Positions 313-30,742 of a stretch of 64,000 bases of DNA are shown in pieces. Source of the stretch: Haliotis rufescens. Lineage: Eukaryota. Under the pieces are notes generated by a model, which was given only the letters and a program-made list of their open reading frames with translations, did no database searches and was not told the origin of the DNA. Numbering within the stretch: the first letter of the stretch is position 1; each line of letters begins with the position of its first letter. Both the position numbers and the translations under genes were made by a program. The stretch lies in assembly GCF_023055435.1 (NCBI RefSeq), contig NW_025963879.1:868001-932000 (forward strand). The letters are read 5' to 3'.

Positions 313-3300
313 CCATCCACGCATCCAGTGACTGTTAACACGGCGTGGTCAGATACCAGCACCCCGGAGCAGTAGTGCTGGCTGTATGTGGTCCTTATTG
401 ACACAACCCAGGGGAACACACATGCCCCACGTGTGCTGTTGAGAGGAAAGGAACCGATGTATCTTCGTTTGCCACAAGTTCCTGGTTGGAAATACATCAC
501 AAAAGTTAATTTAGCTGTTTATGGTAATAGTCTGTTTTGAATGGAACATGAAAATCCCATGAAATCTATGCTTTTTGGTTGCATGATAGTTTGAAAATGT
601 ACGTACTACAACCGGTAGTTTTTCATTGCACAGTGGAGCGATTTAAGCAGAGATTTCTATATATATAAACACATACTTAGGATATTGTCGGAATCGTACA
701 ATAGACTCTGCTTTCAGCAGAAATGTCTTAAGATTAAGTAAAGGGCTTTGACGATTTTTTCTGTGATGAAGGAAAGGGTTTAGTCGCTTTAATTTATGAT
801 TAAAGGAAAGGGTTTTGTGGCTTTTATTTATGAATAAAGGAAAGGGTTTAGTCGCTTTTATTTATGAATAAAGGAAAGGGTTTAGTCACTTTTATTTAAA
901 GTAAAGGGTTTTGTCACTTTTATTTATGATTAAAGGAAAGGGTTTGTCGCTTTTATTTATGATTAAAGGAAAGGGTTTGTCGCTTTTATTTATGATTAAA
1001 GGAAAGGGTTTGTTGCTTTTATTTATGATTAAGGGAAAGGGTTTGTCACTTTTATTTATGATTAAAGGATAGGGTTTGTCGCTTTTACTTATGATTAAAG
1101 GAAAGGGTTTTGTCGCTTTTATTTATGATTAAAGGAAAGGGTTTGTCGCTTTTTTTGTGATTAAAGGAAAGGGTTTGTCACTTTTATTTGTTATTAAAGG
1201 AAAGGGTTTGTCGCTTTTATTTAAAGGAAAGAGTTTGTCACTTTTATTTATGATTAAAGGATAGGGTTTGTCGCTTTAATTTATGATTAAAGGAAAGGGT
1301 TTGTCGCTTTAATTTATGATTAAAGGAAAGGGTTTGTCGCTTTTATTTACGATTAAAGGAAAGGGTTTGTCGCTTTTATTTATGATTAAAGGAAAGGGTT
1401 TGTCGCTTTTTTGTGACTAAAGGAAAGGGTTTGTCACTTTTATTTGTTATTAAAGGAAAGGGTTTGTCGCTTTTATTTAAAGGAAAGAGTTTGTCACTTT
1501 TATTTATGATTAAAGGATAGGGTTTTGTCGCTTTAATTTATGATTAAAGGAAAGGGTTTGTCGCTTTTATTTATGATTAAAGGAAAGGGTTTGTCGCTTT
1601 TATTTGTGATTAAAGGAAAGGGTTTGTCGCTTTTATTTAAAAGGAAATGGTTTTGTCGCTTTTATTTATGATTAAAGGGAAGGGTTCAGTCGATTTTATT
1701 TAAAGGAAAGAGTTTGTCACTTTTATTTATTATTAAAGGAAAGGGTTTGTCGCTTTATTCATGATTAAAGGAAAGGGTTTGTCGCTTTTTATTTATGATT
1801 AAAGAAAAGGGTTTGTCGCTTTTATTTATGATTAAAGTAAAGGGTTTAGTCGTTTTTTATTATGATTAAATGAAAGGGTTTTGTCGCTTTTAGTTATTAT
1901 TAATGGAAGGGTTTTGTCGCTTTTATTTTACCTAAGTTGTTAGGTTTACTGCCAAATTGACAAAGGTTGTTTTGAAGAGAATATAAAGATCCAATGACAT
2001 GAATTTCGTTTAATTACGATTTACAAATGCACTTAAAACTACCAATACTTCATCCTTGCTTTGACTTTAGTGTTTTTATTTCTACGACACCTTGGCATGT
2101 TAAGTTTCCCACCTGTTGAGGTAGACCCATGTAAAGTTGTTTCAAAGCTTGAAAACGTTACAGCAGATGTGTCGACTCTGGGTGTCGTCGTCCATGTTGG
2201 TAATGGTGTCGGTACTGTTGTTTCCCTTGGAAATGTATCTGTGGTAGTTGTAGAGTTGGGAGACATCCTAGTGACAGGCATGCAGCAGGTTGACCTGAAG
2301 TGTGGGCATGTTGTTGGCAAGGAATACTTCGTCTCGTAGTCTGGCATGCACCACTGTCGGCAAATACCACCAATGTACCAGCACGCTGTGAATGGACATC
2401 AACATGAGCATTTACAGAACACAGTTGCCAAAGCTTTATGTTTTATATCAATGAACATTATTTTCACATGTGTACTTGTCGTCTTGGACTTGTATGAGTT
2501 TTGAAAATTTGGAATAGCAACAGAGGCTACTATTATATTGATTGCTTTACTATAACATGACATGATTCAGCTAATACTACAAAAAACTATCAAGAACCCG
2601 ATTTCATTGAATGTAATAAAATTGGCATTAATGCAGTGTAATATGTTACGGTATACCTCACTAAGTTATGCCTTTTACCCATGAAATGTATTTATTATGC
2701 CACATGTACTTACGTAGTGCCACGCAGCAGGTGCCCTGGTACCCCATGCCGTTGTTGCAGTAGTCTAAGCCGAGGTTGACCTCCACACGGTGACACAACC
2801 CCCGACATTCCCCGCCATAACGAAGGTGGCACACTAAACATATAGAACGGTTAATTTACAGGTCAGAGCCCAGTTTATGTAGTAACTGCAAGACATGGAC
2901 ATGTGATGGCATTCCTAACATGTCTTTACAGCAAGGGAATCATTTCTTGGCATAATATGTGTTATAGATTAGCTGAAATATTAAACAAAACGAAAAGAAA
3001 TCACTGATATTCTGCTTACCTAGAGATACACGCCATTGATCTTAATTGCATTTAACTTAAACACAACATGTATGGCTGATATAAATAGTGCCTTAGTTGC
3101 ACATCAGTATCATAAATATATATACATGTAATATTATCATAATATTTTATAACTGATATAACACTGGACAAGTATTCATTTTGCATTTATATTTGTTTTG
3201 TCAGTTAGCAGAGTAAATCATGTCAGTACATCAGCCTCTTTCTTACAATACACGAAAGAATACGTACGTGACCAAAAGAAATATTGTGCGCAAACAGCTT

Positions 3301-3343
3301 GCAGATAAAACAACCAACAAACACACAGTATCCAAAATAACAT
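313..3343 (-). CDS. G1: secreted serine protease homologue with two beta-defensin-like modules (3' part beyond left edge of window)
   Basis: Exons (minus): 3343-3268 signal peptide MLFWILCVCWLFYLQAVCA-QYFFWS; probable 21-nt micro-exon 3040-3020; 2833-2714 CHLRYGGECRGLCHRVEVNLGLDYCNNGMGYQGTCC; 2385-2113 CWYIGGICRQWCMPDYETKYSLPTTCPHFRSTCC plus Thr-rich linker; 481-313 GTCGKRRYIGS...CVFPWVVSI...HYCSGVLVSDHAVLTVTGCVD. TAAHC has become TVTGC (catalytic His lost). All introns GT-AG with compatible phases. Confidence 0.85.
765..1930. repeat. ~30-bp minisatellite in a G1 intron
   Basis: Roughly 38 copies of TTTATGATTAAAGGAAAGGGTTTGTCGCTT with small indels. Confidence 0.95.
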
Positions 3344-4052
3344 CCCAGTTACAGTTGAAGGTGCTGATCCTGTGGCGCCTGTTCAAGAAGATCCCCATTC
3401 TGTACCACGCTCTTGTACAAGCTCCTCGAACCTTCAACTTTTTGCGTTTCACCAGGCTTTGTTAACTATTTCTTCTATCAGTGTGAAAATCACGCCCGAA
3501 TCGGTCAAACTCTTAACTTGTCAAACGACAATGACACCCAGCCTGCACATATGCAAGTTATGTATGGCCTCGTGCTTTCAGACTTCAAGACTAATAAGAT
3601 CACACTCTCCACAGCTTTGAACTCTCGCCCTAACCCTAGACAGATACATGTTATGGGTGTTTGTTCACGAATCCGTCTCGGATCGTAGAAACATGTTCTC
3701 TTCCTATGTAAATAAAACTGCAAGAAAACTACGACGTAATGACCACTCGTATGTTTATGTATTTTAACGTGATGCTGCACAAAAAGCATCTCAATCCTTG
3801 TAAAACATTGTGAGGTGCATATGAAGTGAATCCATCGCAACTTTCAATGTTCTTGATACTATCGAACACGTGTAACTGTGTTAGTATTAAATGAATAACT
3901 TAAGAACTAAAAAGAACTAAAGAAACTGATCACAATGTATCACCATGCAGCAAAACGTATAGCCAATACCATCTGCATTTTGACAACTTTGATAAATTCT
4001 GGTCGTCAGGCCAATCTTTGTTGACAAACTGATTTGTCATATATTTTAGGTT

Positions 4053-4232
4053 NNNNNNNNNNNNNNNNNNNNNNNNNNNNNNNNNNNNNNNNNNNNNNNN
4101 NNNNNNNNNNNNNNNNNNNNNNNNNNNNNNNNNNNNNNNNNNNNNNNNNNNNNNNNNNNNNNNNNNNNNNNNNNNNNNNNNNNNNNNNNNNNNNNNNNNN
4201 NNNNNNNNNNNNNNNNNNNNNNNNNNNNNNNN
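4053..4232. other. Assembly gap (others at 6299-6508, 38792-38965, 45349-45485, 46933-47075)
   Basis: Runs of N. Confidence 1.
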
Positions 4233-5728: not shown

Positions 5729-7933
5729 CTACAGGTTTTGAAGAATCCATGGAATATGTCCCCGAACATCCGTATAAACCACAGGAAGTGTTTGTGAACA
5801 TGCGTTGTCGCTGATGACACCAATGAGCGTCCACACGTTCGGCTGTTGTTCACAGACCAGCATTCCACCGTTGTCTCCCTGAACAAATATCAAAGTACAA
5901 TCAACAATCAAAGTCTGATATAACGAAGAATGTTGTATCGAAGTCTTTTTGAGCTATGGACAGACCACAGCTGTACAGTCCATGACTATACTAGACAAAT
6001 TAGATACATGTACTATTCATCTGCACAAATGTGATTCGTTTGAATGTAGCATTTGCTTTCAAATAAATGCGCGCGTGGTTCTAAAGCACTACAGTGTAGT
6101 GATTAGAGCGTATGCCCGGAGACCGGAATTCCTACCAAAAGACGTTAGACGATTATTCTTGTTATTACCCTGCCTGGTACTCCGCAAAAAGGAGATGGAA
6201 CAAGAACTGGTCGTCTAGGTGCCAGTATGCTGTGTCTGATATAGGTATACAAACTGTGTGTTAGTGCTATAACTTCGACATAATTATGCATTAATCTANN
6301 NNNNNNNNNNNNNNNNNNNNNNNNNNNNNNNNNNNNNNNNNNNNNNNNNNNNNNNNNNNNNNNNNNNNNNNNNNNNNNNNNNNNNNNNNNNNNNNNNNNN
6401 NNNNNNNNNNNNNNNNNNNNNNNNNNNNNNNNNNNNNNNNNNNNNNNNNNNNNNNNNNNNNNNNNNNNNNNNNNNNNNNNNNNNNNNNNNNNNNNNNNNN
6501 NNNNNNNNAGTGCAATAATCTTGAACACGATGATAAACCCCGTTTTACCTCACCTCACTTCAAACATGTGGTCGTCATATACCTAAATTACCACGCTGTA
6601 ACCAAAATGAACTTTGCCATATATAAACATGATACTGATGGTATTAATGAATGCAACAGGAAAGACTAATAAGAAAACAAAAGATAAAAATGTTGTCAAA
6701 TGGAACTACCCAGCAGATGAGGCAACCCATTTTACCTAAGCTATGCATAACATTTACCTGGCAAGCATCTGTGCGGTCTATGAAAGGAGCAGAACACAGC
6801 TTATCCGGAGGTAGTTGGGAATTCACTCCTAATGCTAAGACGATGGAACACACCGCGTTGTTGACCACGTTCACACGGGACTCATGCAACAAGCCATCGG
6901 AAGCTGAAACGAATCTTACGTTTCTTAAGATGGAGCAACTATGGACAAAAACCTTAGTCGATAATGCACCCAAGGAAAGTTTATTTATGTAGAATGTAAT
7001 GCTACATGTGAACCAAAAACGACAGAGGTTAGTTAGTAAAGGGTTGAGGCGATATCATATTTCGTCACCTTCGGGGCACGTACGGTATGATATAACAGGC
7101 AAATTCCTTTCTTCCAGTCTGTTCCCTTAGCTGACGTGTAAGAAATAATTATTACACATATTGATAATGGTACAATACTGAGTATGAGAACTGGTTTTAC
7201 ATAAATTCGAATTTTATTGCAACTTCTGTCAACGGAAGCTGACGATTCTAGCATATATTCTAACATGTACACTTGATTGTCTGGTGTGTTTTCATGCCGC
7301 TGTCACATAGCAGGAGTACTGACTTGCGGTGTCAGGCTGCAAACACATACCTTTGAGGCATACTGAGTGGCGGATGCTACCGATAGGGCAAGACATGCTT
7401 AGTTACATTTTTCGCTCACACCTAATCTCATCACTGAGTTTCAGTGATCCATTCACATAATGTTCACTGCTAGTGTGTATTTTACACTCAGTGGAATCTG
7501 ATTCGTTGGACAATCGAGGCTGGCTATTTTCAAGCATTGAAGCATAATATTTATATGATGAATTAAATTGATATCCATCGATGCCAAACATACCTGCATT
7601 AAAACCCCACCCAGCGATAAAGCATCTGGTGGCGGGGAGGATGTCTTCACCTGCACGAGGCAGGCAGGCTGGCTGGGCGGGGGCAGGAGCAGATGACTCC
7701 AAAGTAAGGATTGCTATATCATTGCCTGTGGAGTATAGGTGACTATTTCACAAATGAAATTTTTAAAACATTTGTGAAATCAAAATAAATTCAAAAGAGT
7801 GATTTCTTACTCGAATATACATTGTACAGTGCTCAATACATCACTTAAATAAAAATTCTTGATGGAAGGGCTGATTTAAATTTGTCTTTGCCACACCATT
7901 GTGTATTGTGGACTCAAACAAGAATACTAATGT

Positions 7934-8004
<71 letters not shown>

Positions 8005-11000
8005 CATACATTCATACATCTTCTAATATTTATCATTAATGGCAGTTTTCCTATTCTTATAAATATAACAGTCGTCTATATTCACGAATTTACATTCAAT
8101 GATCTTTATGTGGAGACACGCGGGTTTCGCCAAAATGGTGTACGTCCGGCATCATTTAGTCTTCCGATCCACTTTTAGCTGATACGCGGTGAAATTCAGT
8201 TCCACATACTAAATCTGCAACATACATTCATCATTCATTCAAGACCAATCAAGTTCATAAGGAACACATATGCTTACACATCTATAAGCATGCATATTAG
8301 AATAGTCAGATACATTCAAATGTACCATGCATATGCATGTTCATTTATGTATCGATCATTCACCAACGCACCATACACTATTCAGAGCAAAGTACCTTGC
8401 AACGTGTCCCCGGGCCGTGGTGGGCCGAAGGCTGGATGGACAATGGTGCCACGAACACGAATGTCTGTTTCTCCAATTTCTCCCTGGTTGTTTATATTGT
8501 TTTCTGTGATGGTCACATACATGGTCGAAGCACTGAGGGGCATACAATGTTAGGATGAAAATACATATGTCGCTTTAACTTGACCAAACAATAATTAAAT
8601 CCGCTTTACAAAATGTGTTAACGTAGTTCCTGTATCATTTTGTCGGAGACGATTTCGCGATTTGCCCAAACATCTGGTATAATAACTATATTATAAACAC
8701 TTCTTATGATTATAACAAGGGTTGTGTCTTTTTTTACTATCAAATATGTATTCTGAACACAAGAAACGTTAACTTCATCCAAGTTTGATGAAAATATTAT
8801 CTTATCATCCTTGGATATCTACCCTGAAAACAATACCTTTCGGCACAGCTGGCCGTGGTTAGGACCCTGTTGTTTCTAATGAGTACTCCAGCACATATGT
8901 GTGTGCCGCTGGATGGCGAACCAGTCTTGATGGATACCATCCAGGGCCACTGAGAAGGAGAGTCCACAGGGCTGCCTCCCAGGATCCGTGGTCTAAAGAT
9001 TCGTCTTCCTCCACAGTCTGGTATAATTGTGATGACATACAAAGAGGATATTAGTCGAGTTTCCGTATGGTAAATATATTAATAATATATCAGGAATTTA
9101 TATGCAGTGTGCGGGCCTCTTCTGACTGCTCTAATTTCATGCAATAATCTCATGTATGTGGCTCAGTGTATACGTATAAACGAATTAGATTTCTACAGAC
9201 ATTTTATTGTTGTTATGCCATATGGTACATGTGATAAATCAGGGAAAGTTAAGGAAAGCTGGTCTCTTAAAGGATGGGTGACCGTGTTTGGCAAGCTTGA
9301 ATCCTGAGCTCTTCTCGAGCTCTGATCATGCCTCACACTGAAGGCAAGTTGTGGTGTTTATTTAGGCAATTGATTTTGATTAAAATATGCCTCAGTTTAC
9401 TGAGCAGTGAATGGGTACCCGGAGAATCAGATGGTAATGCGATAGCTTAGTTCCTATACTCCTCGTAGAGCTGAGAATGAAATTCGAATTAAGAGTGATC
9501 GATCTACCAGGGTAATAATGGTGCGCTTTGAAAATGATATCCAGCATGGAAAAGCGAGATAGAAATGGAATGCTATTACTTGAAACATCAATGTCTAAAG
9601 AGTATAAATCAGAATTATGTTCGTTTCGAAAAAAGAATAGGGACAAACAATAACAAGCTCAAATCAACAATCTATACACATGAACCACCTCTTTGTCATT
9701 CCATCAGGGAAATTCGCAACTCTTTAACATACATTCCTTGGTGGTTCATAAATTGGATACATCTGAACTGGACCCGTGAAGATCCGGGTTAGAATAGGTC
9801 TTCAGCATCCATGCTTGCCGTAAAAGGCGACTAGGCTTGTCGTAAGGGGTGGTCAGGCTCGCTGACTTGGTTGATGCATGTCATCGAACCCAATTGCGTG
9901 GATCGAAGCTCAGGATATCAATCTTGTCTGGTCCAGAGTGCGGCGTTAACAACCAGCCAACCAACATCTGAACAGATGGGGCCTTTAACTGACTCATCAT
10001 CTGATGAAGGGACAAGTAGCACTGAGATGTCATTATGAACAATAAATAGGTTGTTATCCAAACAATGTTTCACTTTTCAATACTTTAAATCAAATAACAT
10101 AGATAAGCATGTCTTACTGGAGAATATGTTTGGTCTGGAGGTAGGGGCGACAGGTTGCATTGTGAATGGCCCAAATGACCTATCGCCCTCGGGCCTTCTC
10201 AGGCAACATGTCTGTTGCGAGTTGAAACATCGCACTTTGTATGTGTACTCCGTCTCTGTTAAACTGAGACATCCACTTTGGCGACATACTCCACCATAAG
10301 CTGAACAAGCTACAAAAAACAAACAGACAATTTAGTATTACCAGGACTCCGGCTTGTTGTCCTTGACATCACATACTGCCGTCATGTTATGTACCTACAT
10401 GTGATCTCATTATCAATCACCGACGATCCCAGTGGGAGTTCTGGGTTAGAATAGACCCCCATCAACACGTGACCCACCAGGAGAAAAGGAACCTTATGGG
10501 TCCTGCGTACAATTGTGCAGTGACGTCATAAAGAAAGAAGTTTGACGTCAACTTAGTTCCGTTAAAATGGTCATGTGTGCGGACTGTTATAAGTCTGAAA
10601 ATGGGACTTTGCAGAAAAATATTTCAAATGTTTAATGCCATGCATCACAGTAATTGATATGAATTGAAGCTTATGAATTGCATTTAATAGCCTAGGATTC
10701 CGTAGTTTTAAAATGTTTTACGAAGTCAAAATGTGATTTTTCACCAATAAGGTCCCTCATCTGATGGTTGGTCACAATTATGCTCATAACGTATTCGCGG
10801 CTGCATGGATCGGATAGTCAGGGCTACAATTCCTTATGGCAAAGTGAATGAATGACTTAAAGACAACCTTGAGTTTTATTTCTGTTATATATGTTACAGT
10901 CAATGTGTAAATTCAGTCAATTTGTTAAATGATTAAAAGTTTCACTGAGGCAATTTACAAAATGCCAAACATTTCAGTCATTTTAAAATCATTTTTCCGT

Positions 11001-12403: not shown

Positions 12404-12443
12404 GGTGGTCCGCAATCCTTGTCACTTTGACAGCACAAGACTC

Positions 12444-15530: not shown

Positions 15531-15533
15531 CAG

Positions 15534-15534
<1 letters not shown>

Positions 15535-15602
<68 letters not shown>
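15535..15602. repeat. (CA)n(GA)n compound microsatellite between two tail-to-tail SINEs
   Basis: Direct reading. Confidence 0.9.
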
Positions 15603-15603
<1 letters not shown>

Positions 15604-15639
15604 TCCGTTGTACAATTCCAACCATACCAAAAGCACGTT

Positions 15640-15902
15640 CGTTTGTTTGTTGTTTAACGCCGCACTCAGCGATATTCCAGCTATATGACGACGGTCTGTA
15701 CATAATCGAGTCTGGACCAGACAATCCAGTGATTGACATCACGAGCATCGATCCACTCAATTGGGAAACGATGACAAGCATCAACCGAGTCAGCGAGCCT
15801 GACCACCCGACCCCGTTAGTCGTCTCTTACGACAAGCACAGTCACCTTTTACGGCAATCATGGGTTGCTAAAGACCTATTCTACCTCGGATCTTCACTGG
15901 TC
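15640..15902 (-). mobile_element. SINE-like family A copy
   Basis: Near full-length reverse-complement copy with (CAAA)-type tail. Confidence 0.85.
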
Positions 15903-17177: not shown

Positions 17178-20100
17178 TCAGAGGTTTGAGGTGATCCAGT
17201 CGAGGTGCCTGCTGACCTGCGTGTAGATAACAGGGATCTTTGCATTGCAGTTGCTATCACTGATGAGGCCAAATAGGCTCCACGTTCCTGTCCCATCTTC
17301 ACAAACCAGCATCCCACCGTTGTCTCTCTGAAAATCGTTAAAATCATCATCTACACGGTGTTATGTATTATCTGCACATAGCGAAACAGAAACATCCATT
17401 TTTATTAGAATCTGTAAGTGTGTAAGAATCTGTAAGTGTGTAAGTCTCCAGATTGAGCTGCGAGCTGCCTTTTTGAGATGTACTGTATACAATCCTCCTC
17501 CAGTGTTAATAGCGGATAAGTAAAAACGGATCAAATTGCTATTACTAAGATTCGTTAATATGGAAAGTCGTCAATACGGACGATTTCAGGAAGAACAATA
17601 CTGTCCGGATTAATATCGGTTTTTTTATATTCATGTAGAAAATTGATACACTTATCTAATTAGCTTAGTACTATATATCTGTACGGAACAAAAAGGTTAG
17701 CGATCATGGCTATTTCGGGGGATACTTTTGTGAAATTGTGTTCCCAGACTTTACAAATCCCCAAAAATATTCACGACACCCATCTTTTTCAGTATATATT
17801 GCATGTGAGTACGGATTGATATAGTACTTTGTATTAAGTTATTATTAATTGTGTTCAGGTACTTAAAAGAATGATTATTGCATTTAAGACTAGCAACTAT
17901 TTGTGTTTACCTGACAAGCGTTGGTCCGATCTATGACAGGGTGAGAACAGATTTTGTCCGACGGCAGGTTGGTTCTTGATCCAATTATGAATGAACATAA
18001 GGCATTTTGCATAATCCTCACATTAGCCTCGTGTAGAAGACCGTCCCCGCCTGGAAAACATTCGTTTATCAGATAGAGATGAACATAATGTGCACAAGAA
18101 CATGTATCATAATGTGCACAACAACATGCATCATAATGCGCACAACAACGTGCATCACTAACACTAGAAATGGGCATGACACATTGTACCCCCACGTTCG
18201 GAATAGAACCCGGGTCTATGGCGTGACGCTTAAACCACTTAGCTACCCCACCACCCCTCAGCAGTATATAAGCATCCACGTAGTTAGTGCATGGAGTTAA
18301 ATGGGTTCAACGCCGCTTTGACTTGCATTTCAGTCAGGTAAACGTCGGATGAAAGCCTAAAGTGATGCAGGTCAGGGCATGGTGCAGACAAACAAATAAT
18401 TATAATCAGCACGAATCTGGGATTCTAACCTACGATCATTAGATTCTGGCATGCCTAATGGTATTCCGTCATCAGTGCTGTGTGTATACTTCAACAATGA
18501 TATCTTCACTACAACTTTGCTGTTTGTATTACATCAACATTGTTGTCTGTATTACGTCAACAATGATGTCTATCTTACATCAACATTGTTGTCTGCATTA
18601 CGTCAACAACGATGTCTGTATTACGTCAACAATGATATCTGTATTTCGTCAAGAAATGATGTCTGCATTACGTCAACAATGATGTCTGTATTACGTCAAC
18701 AGTGATATCTGTATTTCGTCAACGTTGTCTGTATTTCTCAAATTTGCTGTCTGTATTACATGAACAGAGTCTGTATTACATCAACAATGATGTCTTTATT
18801 ACGTCAATACGTTTAACACCAAAAGTGATATCTGCATTACGTAAACAGTGATGTCTGTATTACGTCAACAGTGATTTCTGCATTACGTCAACAATGATGT
18901 CTGTATTACGTCAACATTGATGTATATATTACATCAACATTGTTGTCTGCATTACGTCAACAATGATGTCTGTATTACGTCAACAGTGATTTCTGTATTT
19001 CGTCAAGAAATGATGTCTATTTTACATCAACATTGTTGTCTGCATTACGTCAACATTGATGTATATATTACATCAACATTGTTGTCTGCATTACGTCAAC
19101 AATGATGTCTGTATTACGTCAACAGTGATTTCTGCATTACGTCAACAATGATGTCTATTTTACATCAATATTGTTGTCTGCATTACGTCAACATTGATGT
19201 ATATATTACATCAACATTGTTGTCTGTATTAGGTCAACAATGATGTCTATATGTCATTAACATCGTTGTCTGCATTACGTCAACAACGATGTCTGTATTA
19301 CGTCAACAGTGATATCTGTATTTCGTCAAGAAATGATGTCTATATTACATCAACATTGTTGTCTATATTACGTCAACAATGATGTCTGTATTACGTCAAC
19401 AATGATGTCTATTTTACATCAACATTGTTGTCTGCATTACGTCAACATTGATGTATATATTACATCAACATTGTTGTCTATATTACGTAAACAATGATGT
19501 CTGTATTACGTCAACAGTGGTATCTGTATTTCGTCATGAAATGATGTCTATATTACATCAACATTGTTGTCTATATTACGTCAACAATGATGTCTGTATT
19601 ACGTCAACAATGATGTCTATTTTACATCAACATTGTTGTCTGCATTACGTCAACATTGATGTATATATTACATCAACATTGTTGTCTGCATTACGTCAAC
19701 AACGATGTCTGTATTACGTCAACAGTGATTTCTGCATTACGTCAACAATGATGTCTGTATTACGTCAACATTGATGTATATATTACATCAACATTGTTGT
19801 CTGCATTACGTCAACAATGATGTCTGTATTACGTCAACAGTGATTTCTGTATTTCGTCATGAAATGATGTCTATATTACATCAACATTGTTGTCTATATT
19901 ACGTCAACAATGATGTCTGTATTACGTCAACAATGATGTCTATTTTACATCAACATTGTTGTCTGCATTACGTCAACATTGATGTATATATTACATCAAC
20001 ATTGTTGTCTGCATTACGTCAACAACGATGTCTGTATTACGTCAACAGTGATTTCTGCATTACGTCAACAATGATGTCTGTATTACGTCAACATTGATGT

Positions 20101-23100
20101 ATATATTACATCAACATTGTTGTCTGCATTACGTCAACAATGATGTCTGTATTACGTCAACAGTGATTTCTGTATTTCGTCAAGAAATGATGTCTATTTT
20201 ACATCAACATTGTTGTCTGCATTACGTCAACATTGATGTATATATTACATCAACATTGTTGTCTGCATTACGTCAACAATGATGTCTGTATTACGTCAAC
20301 AGTGATTTCTGCATTACGTCAACAATGATGTCTATTTTACATCAATATTGTTGTCTGCATTACGTCAACATTGATGTATATATTACATCAACATTGTTGT
20401 CTGTATTAGGTCAACAATGATGTCTATATTACATCAACATTGTTGTCTGCATTACGTCAACAATGATGTCTGTATTACGTCAACAGTGATATCTGTATTT
20501 CGTCAAGAAATGATGTCTGCATTACGTCAACAATGATGTCTGTATTACGTCAACAGTGATATCTGTATTTCGTCAACGTTGTCTGTATTTCTCAAATTTG
20601 CTGTCTGTATTACATGAACAGAGTCTGTATTACATCAACAATGATGTCTTTATTACGTCAATACGTTTAACACCAAAAGTGATATCTGCATTACGTAAAC
20701 AGTGATGTCTGTATTGCGTCAACAATGATATCTGTGTTACAAATAAATGCTATAAGGCCCGTGTAATCATATGGCTTCCCGTGTTTGTTTATTTTGATCT
20801 CTTATCTCTAACCCTATGGATCATAAATATATTGGGCGCACGGGCGGCCCAGTCTTCTTAGGCGCCGTGATTCGCTGTATAAAATTGTGTCCCTTCGGCA
20901 CGCCAGAAACCTATGATTGTAGGTTCGATTATGTTTCTAGGTTTGTCAGCACCATATCCGTGCTCGTGGGTTTCACCGAAGTGGTAAACGTCTGAGACCT
21001 GCATCACTTCGGGCTTTCCTCCCTCGTTAAGCTGACACTCCGTGATATAACTGGAATACTGTTAAAAGCGGCGTTAAACCCAACTCACTCACTCATAAAT
21101 CTATTGATGTACTCACGTGCATTTGGCCCCCAGCCTGCTATGTAACATCTGCTGTTTGAGTCGACGGTCTCCCCATTCCGAGGAAGACAGACAGGTTGTG
21201 CACATGAAGTTCCATCAGACGGAATGGATGATTCCAGTGTCAGAATGGCTATGTCGTCAGCTGTTAATTGTTGATGACATCTTAAATAATGGACATCACT
21301 TGACTACATTCCATGCACATTTATGAATACTTTAACTTCACGATACGCTCATTTGATTACAATCTTACGCCATTAAACCAGTATGGATGTCGTAGAATGC
21401 AGTTTACCATGATATATTTTTGACGTACAATTATAATCCAGCTATTTTATGAACGGCCTGTAAATAGTCGAATCAGAAAAAGAAAACCAGTGGTTGACAT
21501 TATGAACAGCGTCAGGTCGTAAGATGACCCGCAATCAACAGAGTCAGCTTGCCTGACAACCCAGCCGATCTTAGACGCCTCTTACCACGAGGTTACATGG
21601 AACCAATTCTCCCTTCACGGAAATCGGACGGGGTTGGTACATAAACGAATGGTGTCAGTTTGACAATAACGTGTAACTGTATTGGATATCGGGTAAAGTA
21701 CCTACCCCTCAATGGCTCTCCAAGGTCGGTGGGGCTTGGATTTGGTGTGGCTACACCAGTAACAGCCACGGTCTGCTCGCCATTTTCCCAAAGGTTGTTG
21801 ATGTTATTCTCGCCAACAGTTACAACCACCTGGCGGCTGGAACAGAAGCAGACATCTCAATCGACATCGTGATGTCAAAGTTGAATTACGAATAACGAAT
21901 CACATCTGCTTTAAGTTCAACAACGTGATCGTAGAGCTATGACTACCGTAATAACATATATGTGTCTTACGTCGTTTACGTGGTCGAACTCCATCTGTCA
22001 GTAATATTCTCCCATATAAAGAAACATAAACGTGTTTGAGAAGTTTTCTTTTATAATACAATGAACTTAAAACGTAAATGAAAATGTTTGTTTGTCTTCA
22101 GTTCGTGTTAATTTTGTTGACACAACCAGTGTTATACAGAAGACACTGTCAGTGACGACGGGAAGGTAATCGTCTTCATGGTTGATGGAAAGGAAAACCA
22201 GAGTGGGTAATGCAGTCGAAAAATGCAACAACTAACTGACTCTTTTGATGATATGTTGTTACCCTCAATATTGCAAAACACAAACTGATTTGTGAATTAT
22301 TGGTATTCATCAAGTAAAACTGTTTAAAACTGTCAACTGTTTCATTCAAACTACACTTTAAACCCAATCTCATTAAAATCAGATCTTAGTTCTCGCTACC
22401 GCTAAACAGAGATCTGAGGACATCCCATTATGGGTAACGTCATAACGACCTTTCTTTCGACGAATCAGAACGTCGCTTACCAGATCATGAAAGTGACAGT
22501 CGGAATGTAAATTCTAATCATACAACCTCGAAAACTTTAACACGGGGTATTAAGAACGATAGTTACGGGCTTAACGACTGAATCCATACAATCTAGACCA
22601 TCTATTAGCCATTTCAAAATGTTATTTTGTTCAGGTTTCAAATATTTTATCGAAAATTTGTCAAAATATGCTTCGAAGCGTTGTCGCCAATTTGAAATTA
22701 GTGCCGTAAAGCACAAGAAAGCTGCCTTCTGATTGGCTAATGTCGACTTCCTGTCAGCCATTTCATTGGTCGGTCAAAGTAAGCGCAAGGTCGGTCTGAC
22801 GTGACCCGGAATGGGATGTCCTCAGATCTTTGTTCAGCGGTAGCGAGAACTAAGATCTGATTATAATGAGATTGACTTTCAACCCTGCATAGAGTCTACA
22901 GTCACAACTTACCCGAGCACACAGCTTGATGTGGTGAGAACCTTGTTGCGGTTGACAAGCACTCCGGCACAGATGTGAGGGCCAATGTTGCTGGTTGTTC
23001 CAACCTTAATGGAGACCATCCACGGCCACTGGCACTGGGAGCTGACAGGAACACCACCCACGATACGACCAGCTACAGGATGAAATCGAGGTCGTGAAGC

Positions 23101-26100
23101 ACACACTGAAAAGACATCTACATATATAAGTCACAGTAACGAAACACAGTATGAAATAAAATGAAAATAAATATTAATGAATCTATCAAATATTTACGTT
23201 AAAAACATTTCGAATACAGTTTCACAGTTGAAGAATCAAGAGCTTTATCTGGGACCAGCGTTTTACAATTATTGTTGTTAGCGTTGTTAAGCATAAGTAA
23301 GGATAAGATATATATCTTTATTAAAATCAGGATCACCTTTTCGGTGTATGTTCTAGCACCGTTATCAAACAAGTGAACCTACGTACACCGAAGCGTCTCC
23401 CCAAGTTGTAATAAAGAATGTGTTCATCCTAATACCTTATCCTTACTTAGTACTCCAACTCATCTGAAGACGTTGCTGAGCATATCTGAAATAATTACTG
23501 TAACTTGAAAATTATTAGAATATACACAGGAATGTGAAGTTTCGATAATAACAATAAATATATATATACGAATATCGCGGCACAACATAAATGCTGCTGA
23601 TAGCAAAGTCAAATTCACATTGACACCATACGACGGTATAATTGTTTATTGCATTAATTTCTTCACTGAAATACGACACGATAGATAGGAGTTAGATGGG
23701 AAATTATGATAACTTTTTTTACTTTTAGTACCCGTGAAGATCCTGGTTAGAATAGGTCTTCAGCAACCCATGCTTGCCGTAAAAGGTGACTATACTTGTC
23801 GCAAGAGCGGACTAACGGGATCGGGTGGTCAGGTTCACTGACTTGGTTGATGTATGTCATCGTAAACAACAAACAACATCACCTCATCCTTCTTAGGTTT
23901 AAGGAAATTTGATAATTATTAAAAATGACATACGATTTCTTTCTTTTACTCAGTGCTTCATGTTTCGATGAATTGATTATGTTGATATTGTTGACATCTT
24001 GTAAATATGAACAAGGAGAACGAGGGCTTGTCAAAACGTTCTAAGCCTGGCTAACTTTCAACTATGGGCCATACCAAAGCCCACAATTATGGGCGAATAG
24101 TCAATGTAGTACATTGTTTGAGTAGTTCATTGCAAGAGTATTTGGTCTGCTGAGGCCGTTTGTATATTAGTGACAGACAGTTGAACGTGATAGGGGTCCA
24201 AATGGACACAGAAATGGAAACGAACTAGTACCAAGTTTATTTACTTTGGAGAAAAGTATTCCTAAGAAATTCATGACCGCATGTCACAAGTGTATGGGGA
24301 TAAGTGACCTAGCTATTCCAATGTTCCCTCAACTTCCATTAATGAAGATTCAATCAAGGAGATAGAAAAACTTATACTGTCAGATTCACGTATTGCTATT
24401 GCTGAACTTGAGGAAGACACAGGTCTCAGCCATGGATCCATTGAAACTATTATATCATGAACATTTACAGATGAAGATATCTGCTCGTTGGGTGCCAAAT
24501 GTTCTTAATTTGATCTTCAAGAAAAAGGAACTGTCAACAACTGACATTGCCACAGAAAATGTAGAGATAATTGAAGAGGATTTTATCAAATTCAAAAAGA
24601 GATTAGTAGCGGGTGATGAACATGGGGTCTACCACTATGATCCCGAGTCAAAACATCAATCCACGGAACGGCACCATTCCACTTCTCCGGCATCAAAGAC
24701 ATCCAAGTCTTCAAGATCAGTGAAGTAAGTTATCCTTGTTGATTACTTAGAAAGTCAAAAGACAGTTATCGGTGCCTACTATGCTGATTTGCTTCATCGC
24801 CTGAGAGATTCTATCAAAGAAAAACGACAAGGAATGCTGAGTGCTGGAGTTCTACCCCTTCATGACAATGCCTCTTCTCACACCTATCGACTTGCATAGG
24901 CTGCTGTGCGACATTGTTAGTTAGAAGAGCTTCCTCACCCTCCATACTCGCCAGACCTGGCTCCACCTGTTTCCTAAACTGAAAGAACATCTTCGTGGAA
25001 AGCGCTATGACGACAACGATGACCGCTAAACTGCCGTGAATGGGTATTTCAGGGTGGCTTCAGAAAACTTCTGACTGGAATTTAAAAGCTTCACTATCGA
25101 TATGAGAAGTGAATTGAAAAGCAGGGAGATTATGTTGACTTTCACAATTTTTGGTGTTATTTGTTAGGCTCAGAACCTTTTGACTAGCCCTCGTAGAGGA
25201 CGTGTTGTGGATTATTAGTAACTAACAACGTACCCCGTGGCACGAGTGTCGTCGTAGTTGTCATCGTTGTTGTCTGCGTTACGGGTCTGTTCGACCGTCT
25301 CACACAACATGTTCCTCTTTCTCCGAATGGGCATCTAACGTTGAACTGAAGTGGCACCTCAAAGGTGCTGAAACACCCGCGTTGGCGACACACTCCGCCA
25401 TATGATAAGCACGCTACAAGAAGAAACATCTTTGTCATGTTTTTGTAAACCACATACATATACTATAACATACAAAAACGACACTTCACAAAGTTGTTTC
25501 CTGGGGGTTGGATTCGATTTCTACGTGAGTACAGTGTTTTAAGCTCATTCCTGCTTTCCACCGTATTGGTAGTATTGAGTGAGTGTTAAAATCTAACGTC
25601 ACATCGGCAATATTTCAGCCATATTGTGACGTGGTAGTATTAGATTAACGAAACCGTATATATTCCCTCACATGTAGTTAGAGTGAAAAGTTTGGTGGTA
25701 TAAAATGTTGAGACGACTCTGGTCAGAGAAGGCAACAAAAGAAACTATACCTCTCATTTGTTTTTATCATATGTGTGAGTGTCTATTGAAAATATCTGAT
25801 TAAAAGTAAGCGATATTGTATCATAAAAATACACAAGTTTTGATGGGTATCTTAGACATCTTTTGGAAAATCAATAAAGAGGTCTTTTGGTTGCAACCCA
25901 GTCTTCAATGAAATAATTCATTTTTGCACAAACTTACCCAGCCACAGATAACGTTAAACAAACTGTTGCAGTTATGAGTGATGATTAAATAGACATAATC
26001 AAATTTAACAACCGGTCTTTCTATTTTCAATTACATAAATGACTATACTTTCTTTCGGTATACATTCTTTTGTGAGTCTCATTTACCAGAATCACCTAAT

Positions 26101-27035
26101 TACGAATCAGATAAAGGCATAAAACGAATCTTTGATATTACTATTGACATACAATACACGAGTTTTAATATTGTCCTCGTTAATCCAATGTTTATATCAC
26201 CTCAATCATTTCTTATATGTAACTCAAAAAAGTGGAATATGTTCTCATCTAGAAAACCTCGCAAGGACCGATGGTTTAAAAATGAAACTGCACAGAAAAA
26301 AGACCTTACGTAGAGTAGGCGCACAGCAGACCCCGACACCGAAACCACATGGCTGCCGGCCTAAGATGTACTCTTCACTATCACAGATTCTCTTGCACCG
26401 TCCACCATACTGCCATCCGCAGGTTACCGCACCTGTGAGCATTAATACGTTGATGATAAAAAGTCGAACAGAAACAGGGGCGGATCCAGGATTTTACAAA
26501 AGGAGGTCCACACTACCCTGGCCATAATGCAACCAATGTAAAGTGGATCCTATATTCGAAGGTTGGAATCTCATATTCTCCTGATTATGATTCTTGATTT
26601 GTCTGAACCAAATTCGTGCCCGTAGGTTTCCCCAAAGTGTTAATGCAAAAGAGTTATGCTGGCGCCCCGAGATGTTCCCAACTAAAGTATACTGTATTCC
26701 CTAACCTGAACAGGATTCGATCCAACCCATGAAAAGACATCTTGCGTATCCCGTATCACCAAATTAAGCTTGAATAACGCACAATGTATGGTTCAATCTA
26801 TCAAATCATTGCATTTCATTCTGATTCAAAATTTTGTCATCTCCTTATGTCAATAATTGCTTTGACACTTTGAATGTTTGGCCAGAGGCTTCCAAGACGC
26901 TGGAACAATAATCACAAATATCACGTTTTTAAGAAAAATAAACAATTGCAACCTACCGAAACTGGGAATGAAAAATTGGGAGACCGCCTCAGAAATAAGC
27001 ACTAGTCCTAACGTTAACAGCTTAAGTGAAACCAT
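17178..27035 (-). CDS. G3: secreted non-catalytic serine protease homologue (~379 aa) with two beta-defensin-like modules; paralogue of G2
   Basis: 8 exons: 27035-26957 (MVSLKLLTLGLVLISEAVS-QFFIPSF; alternative ATG at 27050), 26432-26310, 25413-25234, 23105-22913 (GR|IVGG, CQWPW, TTSSC), 21836-21706, 21260-21117 (DDIAIL, CYIAGWG), 18050-17911 (NACQ), 17327-17178 (RDNGG...stop). Spliced length 1140 nt, open frame. Confidence 0.93.
18490..20740. repeat. ~21-bp satellite with ~323-bp higher-order repeat in a G3 intron
   Basis: About 100 units of ATTACGTCAACAATGATGTCT(G). Near-identical 108-aa pseudo-ORFs at 19448 and 19771, and a further copy at 20094, show the 323-bp period. Confidence 0.95.
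20833..21095 (+). mobile_element. SINE family B copy with (CACT)n tail
   Basis: GGCGCCGTGATTCGCTG...GGTTCGA...CTGCATCACTTCGGGCTTTCC...GGCGTTAAACCCAACTCACTCACTC. Confidence 0.85.
22365..22874. mobile_element. MITE with ~63-bp TIRs and 10-bp TSD (Mutator-like)
   Basis: CAATCTCATTAAAATCAGATCTTAGTTCTCGCTACCGCT...GAGGACATCCCA is mirrored at 22812-22874. Flanks are ACTTTAAACC (22355-64) and ACTTTCAACC (22875-84). Confidence 0.85.
23729..23880 (+). mobile_element. SINE-like family A, 5' part
   Basis: CCCGTGAAGATCCTGGTTAGAATAGGTCTTCAGC...GGTGGTCAGG. Confidence 0.75.
24021..25193 (+). mobile_element. Degenerate mariner (Tc1/mariner) DNA transposon
   Basis: Left TIR CGAGGGCTTGTCAAAACGTTCTAAGCCT; right TIR AGGCTCAGAACCTTTTGACTAGCCCTCG followed by TA. 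Transposase motifs SARWVP, GDE, YDPESKHQS, LHDNA, HPPYSPDLAP are broken by stops and frameshifts. Confidence 0.92.

Positions 27036-30685: not shown

Positions 30686-30742
<57 letters not shown>

What the first reader, a model, noticed from the sequence alone, without database searches (positions are those of the whole stretch)
313..27035. Double beta-defensin (big-defensin-like) modules fused to catalytically altered serine proteases, three tandem genes
Seen: G1, G2 and G3 each read signal peptide + two 6-Cys modules + linker + trypsin-fold domain. The six modules are CHLRYGGECRGLCHRVEVNLGLDYCNNGMGYQGTCC, CWYIGGICRQWCMPDYETKYSLPTTCPHFRSTCC, CWRFCGQCRASCDPGEFMLGPVPCGFGALGTCC, CSAYGGVCRQSGCLSLTETEYTYKVRCFNSQQTCC, CGWQYGGRCKRICDSEEYILGRQPCGFGVGVCC and CLSYGGVCRQRGCFSTFEVPLQFNVRCPFGERGTCC. 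Consensus is C-x6/7-C-x3/4-C-x11/13-C-x6-9-CC, with G-x-C at Cys2 and a Glu 4-5 residues after Cys3. Known: this is the signature of beta-defensins and of the big-defensin C-terminal domain. Tandem double domains occur in tick carboxypeptidase inhibitor and avian AvBD11, and arthropod clip domains share the C1-C5/C2-C4/C3-C6 topology. Inference: a defensin-pseudoprotease family, acting either as clip-like recognition/cofactor proteins or as carriers of defensin-like peptides. I know of no described family with this architecture, but I cannot search to confirm.
Basis: partly seen in the sequence, partly recalled or inferred. Interest (0 to 1): 0.88.

Follow-up and report, generated by a model that had tools for sequence, protein, structure and literature searches.

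The report
Abalone defensin-fold modules on dead proteases
Three neighbouring red-abalone genes encode secreted, catalytically dead trypsin-like proteins that each carry two small beta-defensin-like disulfide modules, a mollusc counterpart of the insect clip-domain protease homologues that has not been described or annotated.

Summary
The window is Haliotis rufescens contig C101. Three tandem minus-strand genes (G1, G2, G3) each encode a signal peptide, two 6-Cys modules, a Thr/Pro-rich linker, a zymogen-type cleavage site and a trypsin-fold domain. Each module sits in its own phase 1-1 exon.

- **Catalytic residues:** His57 is Gly/Ser/Ser and Ser195 is Gly/Asn/Asn. Asp102 is kept.
- **Splicing:** transcript contigs from three runs confirm it for G3. 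The G2 model reproduces a RefSeq protein exactly.
- **Gaps:** both N gaps lie outside coding sequence.
- **Module identity:** the modules do not score as CLIP (PF12032). All weak signals point to beta- or big defensins, but none reaches a family threshold.
- **Distribution:** a profile search of 1.84 billion proteins finds the module only in these abalone genes and in a fourth upstream paralogue, G0. G0 has one module and an intact catalytic triad, and it has single-module relatives in Pomacea, Babylonia, Nucella and possibly Patella.

Best reading: these are clip-like, non-catalytic, cleavage-activated binding or cofactor proteins built on a defensin-fold module. It is a new variant of a known kind. 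The function is inferred, not shown.

The parts
3268..3343 (-). G1 exon 1: start codon and signal peptide (MLFWILCVCWLFYLQAVCAQ...)
   Evidence: ORF; colinear with the H. asinina orthologue P0002; GT-AG model
2714..2833 (-). G1 exon 2: module 1 (Cys framework 2724-2831), phase 1-1
2113..2385 (-). G1 exon 3: module 2 (2282-2383) plus Thr/Pro-rich linker
313..481 (-). G1 exon 4: linker Cys, KRR|YIGS cleavage site, first protease exon with His57 replaced (LTVTGC). The remaining four G1 exons lie upstream of the window (L003 9666-9833, 8752-8964, 8242-8559, 7240-7596, minus strand)
4053..4232 (.). Assembly gap, intergenic between G1 and G2; not filled
   Evidence: G1 starts at 3343 and the G2 stop is at 5729
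12325..12403 (-). G2 exon 1: signal peptide
   Evidence: 100% match to RefSeq protein P0009; model reproduces P0009 exactly
11627..11749 (-). G2 exon 2: module 1 (11640-11738; has a 7th Cys, CWRFCGQC, conserved in three species), phase 1-1
10118..10309 (-). G2 exon 3: module 2 (10203-10307) plus linker
8837..9017 (-). G2 exon 4: linker Cys, RPR|ILGG cleavage site, His57->Ser (LTTASC)
   Evidence: Pfam Trypsin E 4e-9; alignment to factor XI and hepsin
8396..8532 (-). G2 exon 5
7594..7725 (-). G2 exon 6: Asp102 kept (NDIAILTL), Cys122 (PACLP), GWG
6758..6903 (-). G2 exon 7, ends ...DRTDACQ (Asp189 kept)
6299..6508 (.). Assembly gap inside G2 intron 7; not filled
   Evidence: It lies between exon 7 (ends 6758) and exon 8 (starts 5878). 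The protein is continuous across it
5729..5878 (-). G2 exon 8: Ser195->Asn (GDNGGMLVC), stop codon
26957..27035 (-). G3 exon 1: signal peptide (an in-frame ATG also lies at 27050)
   Evidence: (joint 26430/26955, cut +2)
26310..26432 (-). G3 exon 2: module 1 (26323-26421), phase 1-1
   Evidence: transcript contig joints in X1, X2 and X5
25234..25413 (-). G3 exon 3: module 2 (25304-25411) plus Thr-rich linker, phase 1-1
22913..23105 (-). G3 exon 4: linker Cys, AGR|IVGG cleavage site, His57->Ser (LTTSSC)
21706..21836 (-). G3 exon 5
21117..21260 (-). G3 exon 6: Asp102 kept (DDIAILTL)
   Evidence: The automatic model chose a donor 24 nt further on; the GTGAGT donor at 21116 fits the orthologue
17911..18050 (-). 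G3 exon 7
17178..17327 (-). G3 exon 8: Ser195->Asn (RDNGGMLVC), stop codon

Best explanation
G1, G2 and G3 are an abalone-specific trio of secreted serine-protease homologues (pseudoproteases). They arose by tandem duplication inside a larger S1-protease gene cluster.

**Shown.** Each protein is made of:
- a signal peptide;
- two roughly 35-residue six-cysteine modules whose predicted fold is that of beta-defensins, each encoded by its own phase 1-1 exon;
- a Thr/Pro-rich linker;
- a linker cysteine followed by a basic zymogen-type cleavage site, R|(I/Y)(V/L/I)G(G/S);
- a trypsin fold that keeps Asp102 and Asp194 (and Asp189 in G2 and G3) but has lost His57 and Ser195.

**Inferred.**
- The Thr/Pro-rich linker is probably O-glycosylated.
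- They work like arthropod clip-domain serine-protease homologues. They circulate as pro-forms and are cut at the conserved basic site by a trypsin-like protease. The single-module, catalytically intact neighbour G0 or the other proteases of the cluster are candidates.
- The module pair stays tethered through the linker-Cys to Cys122 disulfide.
- They then act without catalysis, as binding, recognition or cofactor proteins of an extracellular, most likely immune, protease network.
- The defensin-fold modules and the dead substrate cleft serve as the binding surfaces.
For: **Gene structure and expression.**
- Anatomy and catalytic substitutions.
- Transcript contigs from three runs in two studies splice the signal, module 1, module 2 and protease exons of G3.
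- The G2 model equals RefSeq XP_046333453.2.

**Conservation.**
- ORFs are intact and orthologues exist in H. asinina and H. cracherodii.
- Modules are as conserved as the protease domain (G2: 87% against 83%, linker 59%), so they are under constraint.
- Modules at position 1 resemble each other across genes more than they resemble position 2 of the same gene. The two-module state therefore predates the gene duplications.

**Module fold.**
- The AF2 model has pLDDT 82.
- Foldseek top hits are hBD-1, hBD-2, AvBD3 and DLP-1/2, with TM 0.6-0.68.
- With VIA-align, 20 of the 23 chains at Z>=2, out of 48,161, are defensin-fold peptides. They include both halves of AvBD11 and oyster big defensin 1.
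- The Atlas's own ESM model gives AvBD11 (GLL11) and beta-defensins 30, 106A and 121 among its neighbours.

**Module sequence.**
- The only PDB sequence hits of the module profile are oyster big defensins.
- Pfam Defensin_beta_2 scores E 0.0014 on the Pomacea relative.

**Support for a non-AMP, clip-like role.**
- Module net charge is only 0 to +2.
- The linker Cys and the cleavage site are conserved.
- Catalytic (G0) and non-catalytic members sit side by side, as with CLIP SPs and SPHs.
Against: - No functional, tissue or infection data. The run metadata were coded, so even the expressing tissue is unknown.
- All similarity scores to defensins are below significance (E 0.09-2, Z 2-3.5). The AF2 model rests on seven sequences.
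- The disulfide connectivity is not known.
- Arthropod cSPHs usually keep His57 and lose only Ser195; here both are gone.
- Molluscs are not known (my own knowledge) to have a clip-type prophenoloxidase cascade, so the partner of such a cofactor is unidentified.
- G2 and G3 have dibasic motifs right after module 2 (LRRP, VRRSNR; RRWKR in H. asinina). These could instead release the module pair.
- The full-length AF2 model was poor (pLDDT 56), so nothing can be said about docking of the modules on the protease domain.
Confidence: 0.55

Rival explanations
1. The modules are true but very divergent CLIP domains, so G0-G3 are simply mollusc members of the clip-domain SP/SPH family.
For: - Same position, N-terminal to an S1 domain.
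- Same six-Cys pattern ending in CC.
- A linker Cys and a basic activation site.
- One or two modules per protein, as in insect PAP-2/3.
- Catalytic and non-catalytic members coexist.
- By my own knowledge, CLIP and beta-defensin share the C1-C5/C2-C4/C3-C6 topology.
Against: - PF12032 gives no hit on any module exon or on the full proteins, even at E<=10.
- In the whole genome PF12032 finds only junk at about 20 bits.
- hhalign of the module profile against a CLIP-bearing easter protein aligns nothing.
- No CLIP-containing PDB chain appears in the sequence search or in either fold search.
- C1-C6 spans 33-36 residues against a 54-position CLIP model.
Confidence: 0.12
2. The proteins are carriers or precursors. 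A convertase cuts after module 2 and releases a free double beta-defensin-like peptide (AvBD11-like) that is the active antimicrobial or signalling agent, and the dead protease is a pro-region.
For: - Dibasic motifs lie directly after module 2 in G2 and G3 in both species compared.
- The double-defensin AvBD11 is among the structural neighbours.
- Big-defensin linkers carry basic cleavage sites (PMC7203481).
Against: - Modules are nearly neutral (net 0 to +2), unlike cationic defensins.
- G1 has no such motif.
- Pro follows the basic residues in most copies, which by my own knowledge disfavours convertase cleavage.
- The protease domain, about 240 residues, is conserved at 83% with its cleavage site, disulfides, Asp102 and Asp194. 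That is too much constraint for a mere pro-region.
Confidence: 0.15
3. They have a non-immune role. The defensin-fold modules would act as enzyme-inhibitor or ligand domains (like tick carboxypeptidase inhibitor or helianthamide), or as mucus, reproductive or digestive-gland binding proteins. The Thr-rich stalk would make them mucin-like.
For: - Helianthamide, a defensin-fold amylase inhibitor, is among the fold neighbours.
- Module 2 plus the linker resembles beta-defensin 126 in language-model features. By my own knowledge that protein is a sperm-coat glycoprotein with an O-glycosylated tail.
- Neighbouring genes are ordinary-looking active S1 proteases.
- The closest G0 relatives outside molluscs are ovochymases.
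Against: No tissue data either way. The zymogen-type site and the linker disulfide are features of regulated extracellular cascades rather than of digestive enzymes.
Confidence: 0.15
4. G1-G3 are decaying duplicates (unitary pseudogenes in the making) of the active G0-type protease and have no function.
For: - Two of the three catalytic residues are lost.
- The clade sits on a very long branch in the tree, and the G1 branch is extreme.
Against: - ORFs are intact with correct GT-AG introns in H. rufescens, with orthologues in H. asinina and H. cracherodii.
- All framework cysteines are conserved.
- Modules are 70-88% identical between species while the linker drifts.
- G3 is transcribed and correctly spliced.
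Confidence: 0.03

Closest known systems
Arthropod clip-domain serine protease homologues (cSPH/CLIPA; e.g. PPAF-II, Manduca SPH1/2, Anopheles CLIPA8/SPCLIP1) and dual-clip proteases (PAP-2/3)
   Same: - Secreted.
- One or two N-terminal six-Cys disulfide modules ending in CC.
- A linker with a Cys that can tether the pro-region.
- Activation-type cleavage before (I/Y)(V/L/I)G(G/S).
- A trypsin fold without catalytic Ser.
- Catalytic and non-catalytic paralogues side by side.
   Different: - The modules do not match the CLIP model (PF12032) and are shorter (33-36 against about 37-55 residues).
- The predicted fold matches beta-defensins, not clip structures.
- His57 is lost as well as Ser195.
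- The host is a gastropod, where no clip cascade is known.
- A Thr-rich mucin-like linker is present.
Big defensins (C-terminal beta-defensin-like domain; oyster Cg-BigDef1/5, PDB 6qbk, 6qbl, 8bgk) and vertebrate beta-defensins
   Same: - A C-x6-C-x3/4-C-x11-13-C-x5-9-CC framework with G-x-C at Cys2.
- They are the only PDB sequence hits of the module profile.
- Predicted three-stranded sheet with a short N-terminal helix.
- A phase-1 intron immediately 5' of the Cys domain, the gene-structure hallmark shared by beta- and big defensins (PMC7203481).
   Different: - All scores are below family thresholds.
- The modules are almost uncharged.
- There is no hydrophobic N-terminal big-defensin domain.
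- The modules are internal domains of a 380-400 residue protein rather than free peptides.
- No canonical big defensin gene was detected in this genome.
Double beta-defensins: avian AvBD11 (PDB 6qes/6qet) and tick carboxypeptidase inhibitor
   Same: - Two tandem defensin-fold modules joined by a very short spacer.
- Both AvBD11 halves and the GLL11 cluster appear among the structural neighbours.
   Different: Those are free two-domain peptides. Here the pair is fused to a linker and a pseudoprotease. No sequence similarity beyond the framework.
Single-module gastropod S1 proteases (G0 = H. rufescens XP_046333457.1 'stubble-like'; Pomacea P0015, Babylonia P0012, Nucella P0013, possibly Patella P0127)
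   Same: - The same module type at the same N-terminal position.
- A Thr-rich linker, a linker Cys and an R|I(I/V)GG site.
- G0 lies about 10 kb upstream of the window start in the same orientation.
- G0 forms a clade with the Pomacea, Babylonia and Nucella proteins (91/96). Patella P0127 did not join this clade (long, unresolved branch).
   Different: They have one module, not two, and an intact His/Asp/Ser triad. G1-G3 form a separate, fast-evolving clade (100/100) seen only in Haliotis.

Membership tests
CLIP domain (Pfam PF12032) | Sequence matches the CLIP profile at or above the gathering score (20 bits) | tested here: not met
   No CLIP hit at E<=10 on the six module exons. None at E<=1 on P0001-P0004 or at E<=5 on the gastropod relatives. 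The genome-wide PF12032 search hits nothing in this locus, and the marginal hits elsewhere are low-complexity junk. hhalign against the CLIP-bearing P0078 gives probability 0.2%.
CLIP domain (Pfam PF12032) | Six Cys with an adjacent C5C6, N-terminal to an S1 domain, followed by a linker Cys and an activation cleavage site | tested here: met
   CGGRRIFRPR|ILGG, CASRPRFHPVAGR|IVGG, CGKRR|YIGS.
CLIP domain (Pfam PF12032) | Clip-type three-dimensional fold (irregular sheet flanked by helices, as in PPAF-II, Grass and PAP-2) | tested here: not met
   No clip-containing chain appears among the Foldseek matches or among the 23 chains with Z>=2 of 48,161. This is a predicted model only, so the result is weak.
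Beta-defensin (Pfam PF00711 / PF13841) | Sequence matches a beta-defensin profile at or above the gathering score | tested here: not met
   Window modules score 11-13 bits against cut-offs of 18-22. The best in the wider family is 19.4 bits against 22.2 (E 0.0014), for Pomacea P0015.
Beta-defensin (Pfam PF00711 / PF13841) | Beta-defensin fold (short N-terminal helix plus three-stranded antiparallel sheet) | tested here: met
   AF2 model pLDDT 82, H3-6 and strands. hBD-1/2, AvBD3 and DLP matches have TM 0.6-0.68 and rmsd 2.1-2.5 A over 37 columns. The VIA list is dominated by defensins. The ESM model has beta-defensin neighbours. These are predictions, and the individual scores are not significant.
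Beta-defensin (Pfam PF00711 / PF13841) | Phase-1 intron immediately upstream of the Cys-rich exon (shared hallmark of beta- and big-defensin genes, PMC7203481) | tested here: met
   All six module exons start 2-5 codons before Cys1 in phase 1, and also end in phase 1. Phase 1-1 is also the commonest class for shuffled extracellular modules, so this is consistent but not diagnostic.
Beta-defensin (Pfam PF00711 / PF13841) | Strongly cationic mature peptide | tested here: not met
   Net charge is 0, +1, 0, +1, +1 and +2 for the six modules.
Beta-defensin (Pfam PF00711 / PF13841) | Disulfide connectivity C1-C5, C2-C4, C3-C6 | not testable with these tools
   Needs disulfide mapping or a solved structure.
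Big defensin (Pfam PF14862) | Hydrophobic N-terminal domain followed by a beta-defensin-like C-terminal domain | tested here: not met
   There is no hydrophobic domain between the signal peptide and module 1. Only the C-terminal domain of oyster big defensins aligns, at E 0.45-2.2.
S1 (chymotrypsin-fold) non-peptidase homologues (SPH) | Trypsin fold recognised by profile | tested here: met
   PF00089 at E 1e-28 to 1e-36 on the orthologues. 427 PDB S1 chains match at E<=1e-5.
S1 (chymotrypsin-fold) non-peptidase homologues (SPH) | At least one catalytic-triad residue replaced | tested here: met
   His57->G/S/S and Ser195->G/N/N (Lys in H. asinina G3). Asp102 is kept.

The most novel reading that the evidence does not exclude
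Gastropods built their own clip-like extracellular protease and pseudoprotease system by exon-shuffling a beta-/big-defensin-type domain onto S1 proteases. The single-module catalytic form is present from Haliotis to caenogastropods, and abalone duplicated the module and killed the enzyme. Two readings follow. Either this is an independent, convergent invention of the clip architecture in Lophotrochozoa. Or it is the missing link showing that arthropod CLIP domains and beta-/big defensins descend from one trans-defensin module that was already attached to proteases in the protostome ancestor. In a genome that appears to lack canonical big defensins, these modules would be its only detected defensin-fold (trans-defensin) sequences.
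Probability: 0.3. Interest if true: 0.8.

Novelty: new variant of a known kind. Interest (0 to 1): 0.62.

Why it matters
**Why it is interesting.**
- Clip-domain proteases and their dead homologues run the best-understood invertebrate immune cascades, but by my own knowledge they are regarded as arthropod-specific.
- Here a mollusc shows the same logic built on a module that looks like a beta- or big defensin rather than a CLIP domain. The logic is a disulfide module, a tether, an activation site and a live or dead trypsin fold.
- That bears on two open questions: how beta-defensins, big defensins and clip domains are related, and whether lophotrochozoans have regulated extracellular protease networks in immunity.

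**Practical points.**
- The genes are annotated only as 'chymotrypsinogen A-like', 'CTRL-1' or 'elastase 2A-like', with the N-terminus unannotated. Transcriptome studies of abalone disease would overlook them.
- They give clear, cheap experiments: expression profiling, recombinant binding assays and cleavage by G0.

Tried and rejected
1. **CLIP membership.** Tested four ways and not met.
2. **More family members in the genome.** The module profile finds only the seven input modules. A single-exon search finds only the module-2 copies.
3. **Canonical big or beta-defensin genes in this genome.** Nothing convincing.
4. **Full-length AF2 model to see how the modules dock on the protease.** pLDDT 56, unusable.
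6. **Literature.** Eight searches found no description of a defensin-module protease in molluscs. Most subscription papers are outside the library, so this is not proof of absence.
7. **Earlier notes of this scan.** None for this place or these words.
8. **Pseudogene reading.** Rejected because of intact ORFs, conservation and spliced transcripts.
9. **Joined models.** The joined spliced models of G1 and G3 were not sent to any search, fold or family tool. Searches were done exon by exon by reference, or with public orthologue proteins returned by the tools. A joined CDS was built only inside a local script to fix exon boundaries.
10. **P0005 and P0006** from the profile search are repeat-derived junk.

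Full report
**Where the window is.** The window is G000:C101:868001-932000 of a 1.33-Gb genome. All genes of the finding lie on the minus strand.

**Check of the observation.**
- The six quoted cysteine modules are present letter for letter. Coordinates: G1 2724-2831 and 2282-2383; G2 11640-11738 and 10203-10307; G3 26323-26421 and 25304-25411.
- A six-frame regular expression for the framework finds five of them. The sixth, G2 module 1, has an extra internal Cys that the regex excluded. It finds none in 50 shuffles of the window.
- The quoted spacing, the invariant Gly two residues before Cys2 and the Glu after Cys3 hold in the alignment.
- The protease exons hit Pfam Trypsin. The full orthologous proteins hit it at E 1e-28 to 1e-36, with nothing annotated on the first 105-160 residues.

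**Gene models.**
- G2: choosing GT-AG junctions gives eight exons (12403-12325, 11749-11627, 10309-10118, 9017-8837, 8532-8396, 7725-7594, 6903-6758, 5878-5729). Their translation is identical to RefSeq XP_046333453.2 (P0009, 379 aa).
- G3: Logan transcript contigs of three runs from two studies (1195, 1345 and 1582 nt) lie on 26310-26430, 25234-25413, 22913-23105 and 21706-21836. They skip the introns between these with CT..AC ends, which is GT..AG on the minus strand, and continue into the signal exon.
- The remaining G3 exons are 21260-21117, 18050-17911 and 17327-17178.
- G1 has only four exons in the window (3343-3268, 2833-2714, 2385-2113, 481-313). Its last four lie upstream in L003.
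- Every module sits in its own exon with phase-1 introns on both sides.
- I did not send joined models of G1 or G3 to any search tool. Searches were exon by exon, or used public orthologue proteins returned by the tools. The joined CDS existed only inside the boundary-finding script.

**Assembly gaps.** Gap 4053-4232 is intergenic, between the G1 start at 3343 and the G2 stop at 5729. Gap 6299-6508 lies in G2 intron 7. Exon 7 ends ...DRTDACQ at 6758 and exon 8 begins GDNGG at 5878. This is colinear, without missing residues, with factor XI and hepsin (...DACKGDSGG...) and with the RefSeq model. Nothing was filled or looked up.

**Catalytic residues.**
- Alignment of P0009 to factor XI and hepsin gives LTAAHC against LTTASC (His57->Ser), DIALLKL against DIAILTL (Asp102 kept), and GDSGGP against GDNGGM (Ser195->Asn). 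Asp189 and Asp194 are kept.
- G3 reads LTTSSC, DDIAILTL and RDNGG (RDKGG in H. asinina).
- G1 reads LTVTGC, FDLVLL and TDGGS.
- All three keep a cysteine shortly before a basic cleavage site: CGGRRIFRPR|ILGG, CASRPRFHPVAGR|IVGG and CGKRR|YIGS. All three also keep the Cys122 context (P-x-CLP).
- So they look like zymogens whose pro-region would stay disulfide-tethered after cleavage. That step is inference from chymotrypsin and clip-protease chemistry.

**What the modules are: evidence against CLIP.**
- Pfam gives no CLIP hit at E<=10 on any module exon, none at E<=1 on the full orthologues and none at E<=5 on the gastropod relatives.
- PF12032 searched over the whole genome finds only marginal 20-bit hits elsewhere, and these are low-complexity junk.
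- hhalign of the seven-module profile against a CLIP-bearing ant easter protein aligns nothing.

**What the modules are: weak signals towards defensins.** Every weak signal points to the defensin fold.
- Sub-threshold Pfam hits to Defensin_beta, Defensin_beta_2 and Defensin_3 on three of the six modules.
- The only three PDB sequences hit by the module profile, of 177,635, are oyster big defensins 1 and 5 (E 0.45-2.2).
- An AlphaFold2 model of module 2 of G3 has pLDDT 82, a short N-terminal helix and strands.
- Foldseek's list for that model is headed by human beta-defensins 1 and 2, avian AvBD3 and platypus DLPs (TM 0.6-0.68, rmsd 2.1-2.5 A, probability up to 0.87, E about 0.5-1).
- An exhaustive VIA-align pass over 48,161 chains returns 23 chains with Z>=2. 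Twenty are defensin-fold peptides: hBD-2 at Z 3.4, crocodile CpoBD13 at 3.3, both halves of the double defensin AvBD11, oyster big defensin 1 with 38% identity, helianthamide and alpha-defensins. None is a clip structure.
- The ESM Atlas's own model of P0009 residues 28-106 has GLL11 (AvBD11) and beta-defensins 30, 106A and 121 among its neighbours, at TM 0.37-0.45.
- Module 2 plus the linker is nearest in language-model features to beta-defensin 126, at 0.75, which is only a lead.
- The phase-1 intron just 5' of the Cys domain is the gene-structure feature that beta- and big-defensin genes share (PMC7203481).

**How far this goes.** None of these scores is individually significant, and the model rests on seven sequences. 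I call the fold 'beta-defensin-like (predicted)'. I do not file the modules as members of either Pfam family. The modules are almost uncharged (net 0 to +2), unlike antimicrobial defensins.

**Distribution.**
- The module profile searched with HMMER against 1.84 billion representative proteins gives only four real clusters.
- Three are the H. asinina orthologues of G2, G1 and G3 (P0001, P0002, P0003). RefSeq names them 'chymotrypsinogen A-like', 'chymotrypsin-like protease CTRL-1' and 'chymotrypsin-like elastase family member 2A'.
- The fourth is P0004, H. rufescens 'serine proteinase stubble-like'.
- P0004 is a fourth paralogue, G0. It lies about 10 kb upstream of the window start, in L004, in the same orientation. 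It has one module, a Thr-rich linker and an intact TAGHC / DDIAM / GDSGG triad.
- H. cracherodii has G0 and G2 orthologues.
- In the H. rufescens genome the profile finds only these seven modules.
- A search with G0 shows related single-module catalytic proteases in other gastropods: Babylonia P0012, Nucella P0013, Pomacea P0015 and perhaps Patella caerulea P0127.
- The Pomacea module scores Defensin_beta_2 at E 0.0014 (19.4 bits, cut-off 22.2). It aligns to the abalone profile at hhalign E 3.9e-4.
- In a protease-domain tree, G0 groups with Gigantopelta and the caenogastropod proteins (91/96). G1-G3 form their own clade (100/100) on a long branch.
- Modules at position 1 are more alike between genes (44-50%), and so are modules at position 2 (40-53%). 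The two modules of one gene are less alike (28-41%). Module duplication therefore came before the gene triplication.
- Between H. rufescens and H. asinina the modules are 70-88% identical. In G2 the figures are modules 87%, protease 83% and linker 59%. Both ends of the protein are under constraint and the linker is not.

**Most likely mechanism (inferred).** G1-G3 are clip-like serine-protease homologues.
- They are secreted pro-forms, cut at the conserved basic site by a trypsin-like enzyme. G0 and the three other active S1 genes in the window are the obvious candidates.
- After cleavage they act non-catalytically as recognition, scaffold or cofactor proteins.
- The tethered pair of defensin-fold modules and the dead cleft (Asp189 retained in G2 and G3) provide the binding surfaces.

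**Rivals.**
- True divergent CLIP domains: tested and not supported.
- Release of a free double-defensin peptide at the dibasic motifs after module 2: possible for G2 and G3. Low charge, a following Pro and strong conservation of the protease part speak against it.
- A non-immune inhibitor, ligand or mucin-like role: not excluded, because no tissue data are available.
- Decaying pseudogenes: rejected.

**Novelty.**
- The principle (a disulfide module, a tether and a live or dead trypsin fold) is that of arthropod CLIPs.
- By my own knowledge, the kinship of clip and defensin disulfide patterns was noted for horseshoe-crab proclotting enzyme and crayfish ppA decades ago. I could not retrieve those papers here.
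- What appears undescribed is a gastropod family in which the module is of beta-/big-defensin type, and its abalone-specific double-module, doubly inactivated offshoot.
- Database names are generic, the N-terminus is unannotated, and eight literature searches found nothing.
- I rate it a new variant of a known kind.

**Tool notes.** The tissue and organism labels of the runs were coded, so expression context could not be read.

Noticed in passing
L004 (G000:C101:848001-858000), minus strand, exons at about 5940-6011, 4280-4461, 3553-3735, 2256-2387, 1129-1278 and further upstream: A fourth paralogue, G0 (RefSeq XP_046333457.1, 346 aa, 'serine proteinase stubble-like'). It has a signal peptide, ONE defensin-like module, a Thr-rich linker and a catalytically intact S1 protease. 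Single-module relatives exist in Pomacea, Babylonia, Nucella and possibly Patella.
   Followed up: yes
window 29194-32522 (-), 38395-41499 (-), 56084-59662 (+): Three further S1 protease genes with intact TAAHC/SAAHC and GDSGG/TDSGG motifs and similar first protease exons (C-E/Q-F/L-P-W). No defensin-like module was found upstream of them by regex. The window is part of a larger protease gene cluster.
   Followed up: partly
window about 38720-38900: Another run of N (assembly gap) inside or next to the last exon region of the 38.4-41.5 kb protease gene, flanked by Thr-rich low-complexity coding sequence. Not filled.
   Followed up: no
window 728-1928: A 33-bp tandem repeat, 37 copies, in G1 intron 3. 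Related arrays occur on other contigs.
   Followed up: partly
window 18521-20741: A 23/46/323-bp nested tandem repeat, about 2.2 kb, in G3 intron 6. It produces long spurious plus-strand ORFs.
   Followed up: partly
window 22248-22995, 23557-23930, 25427-25800: Intronic stretches of G3 with very high summed contig depth in all four runs and many 90-95% matches. These look like dispersed repeats or transposon fragments expressed or present genome-wide.
   Followed up: no
window 11640-11738 (G2 module 1): A seventh cysteine (CWRFCGQC) is conserved in H. rufescens, H. cracherodii and H. asinina. It gives G2 an odd Cys count (23, including none in the signal peptide), so a free thiol or an intermolecular disulfide is possible.
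   Followed up: partly
whole genome: No canonical big-defensin (PF14862) or beta-defensin gene passed threshold in an exon-wise six-frame search of the H. rufescens genome. The best big-defensin hit is 24 bits with an internal stop, at C35:3439234-3439365.
   Followed up: partly
P0087, P0105 (Patella), P0110 (Biomphalaria): Related gastropod S1 proteases carry a different N-terminal 4-Cys domain plus a Ser/Thr-rich linker in place of the defensin-like module. This suggests N-terminal module swapping in this protease lineage.
   Followed up: no
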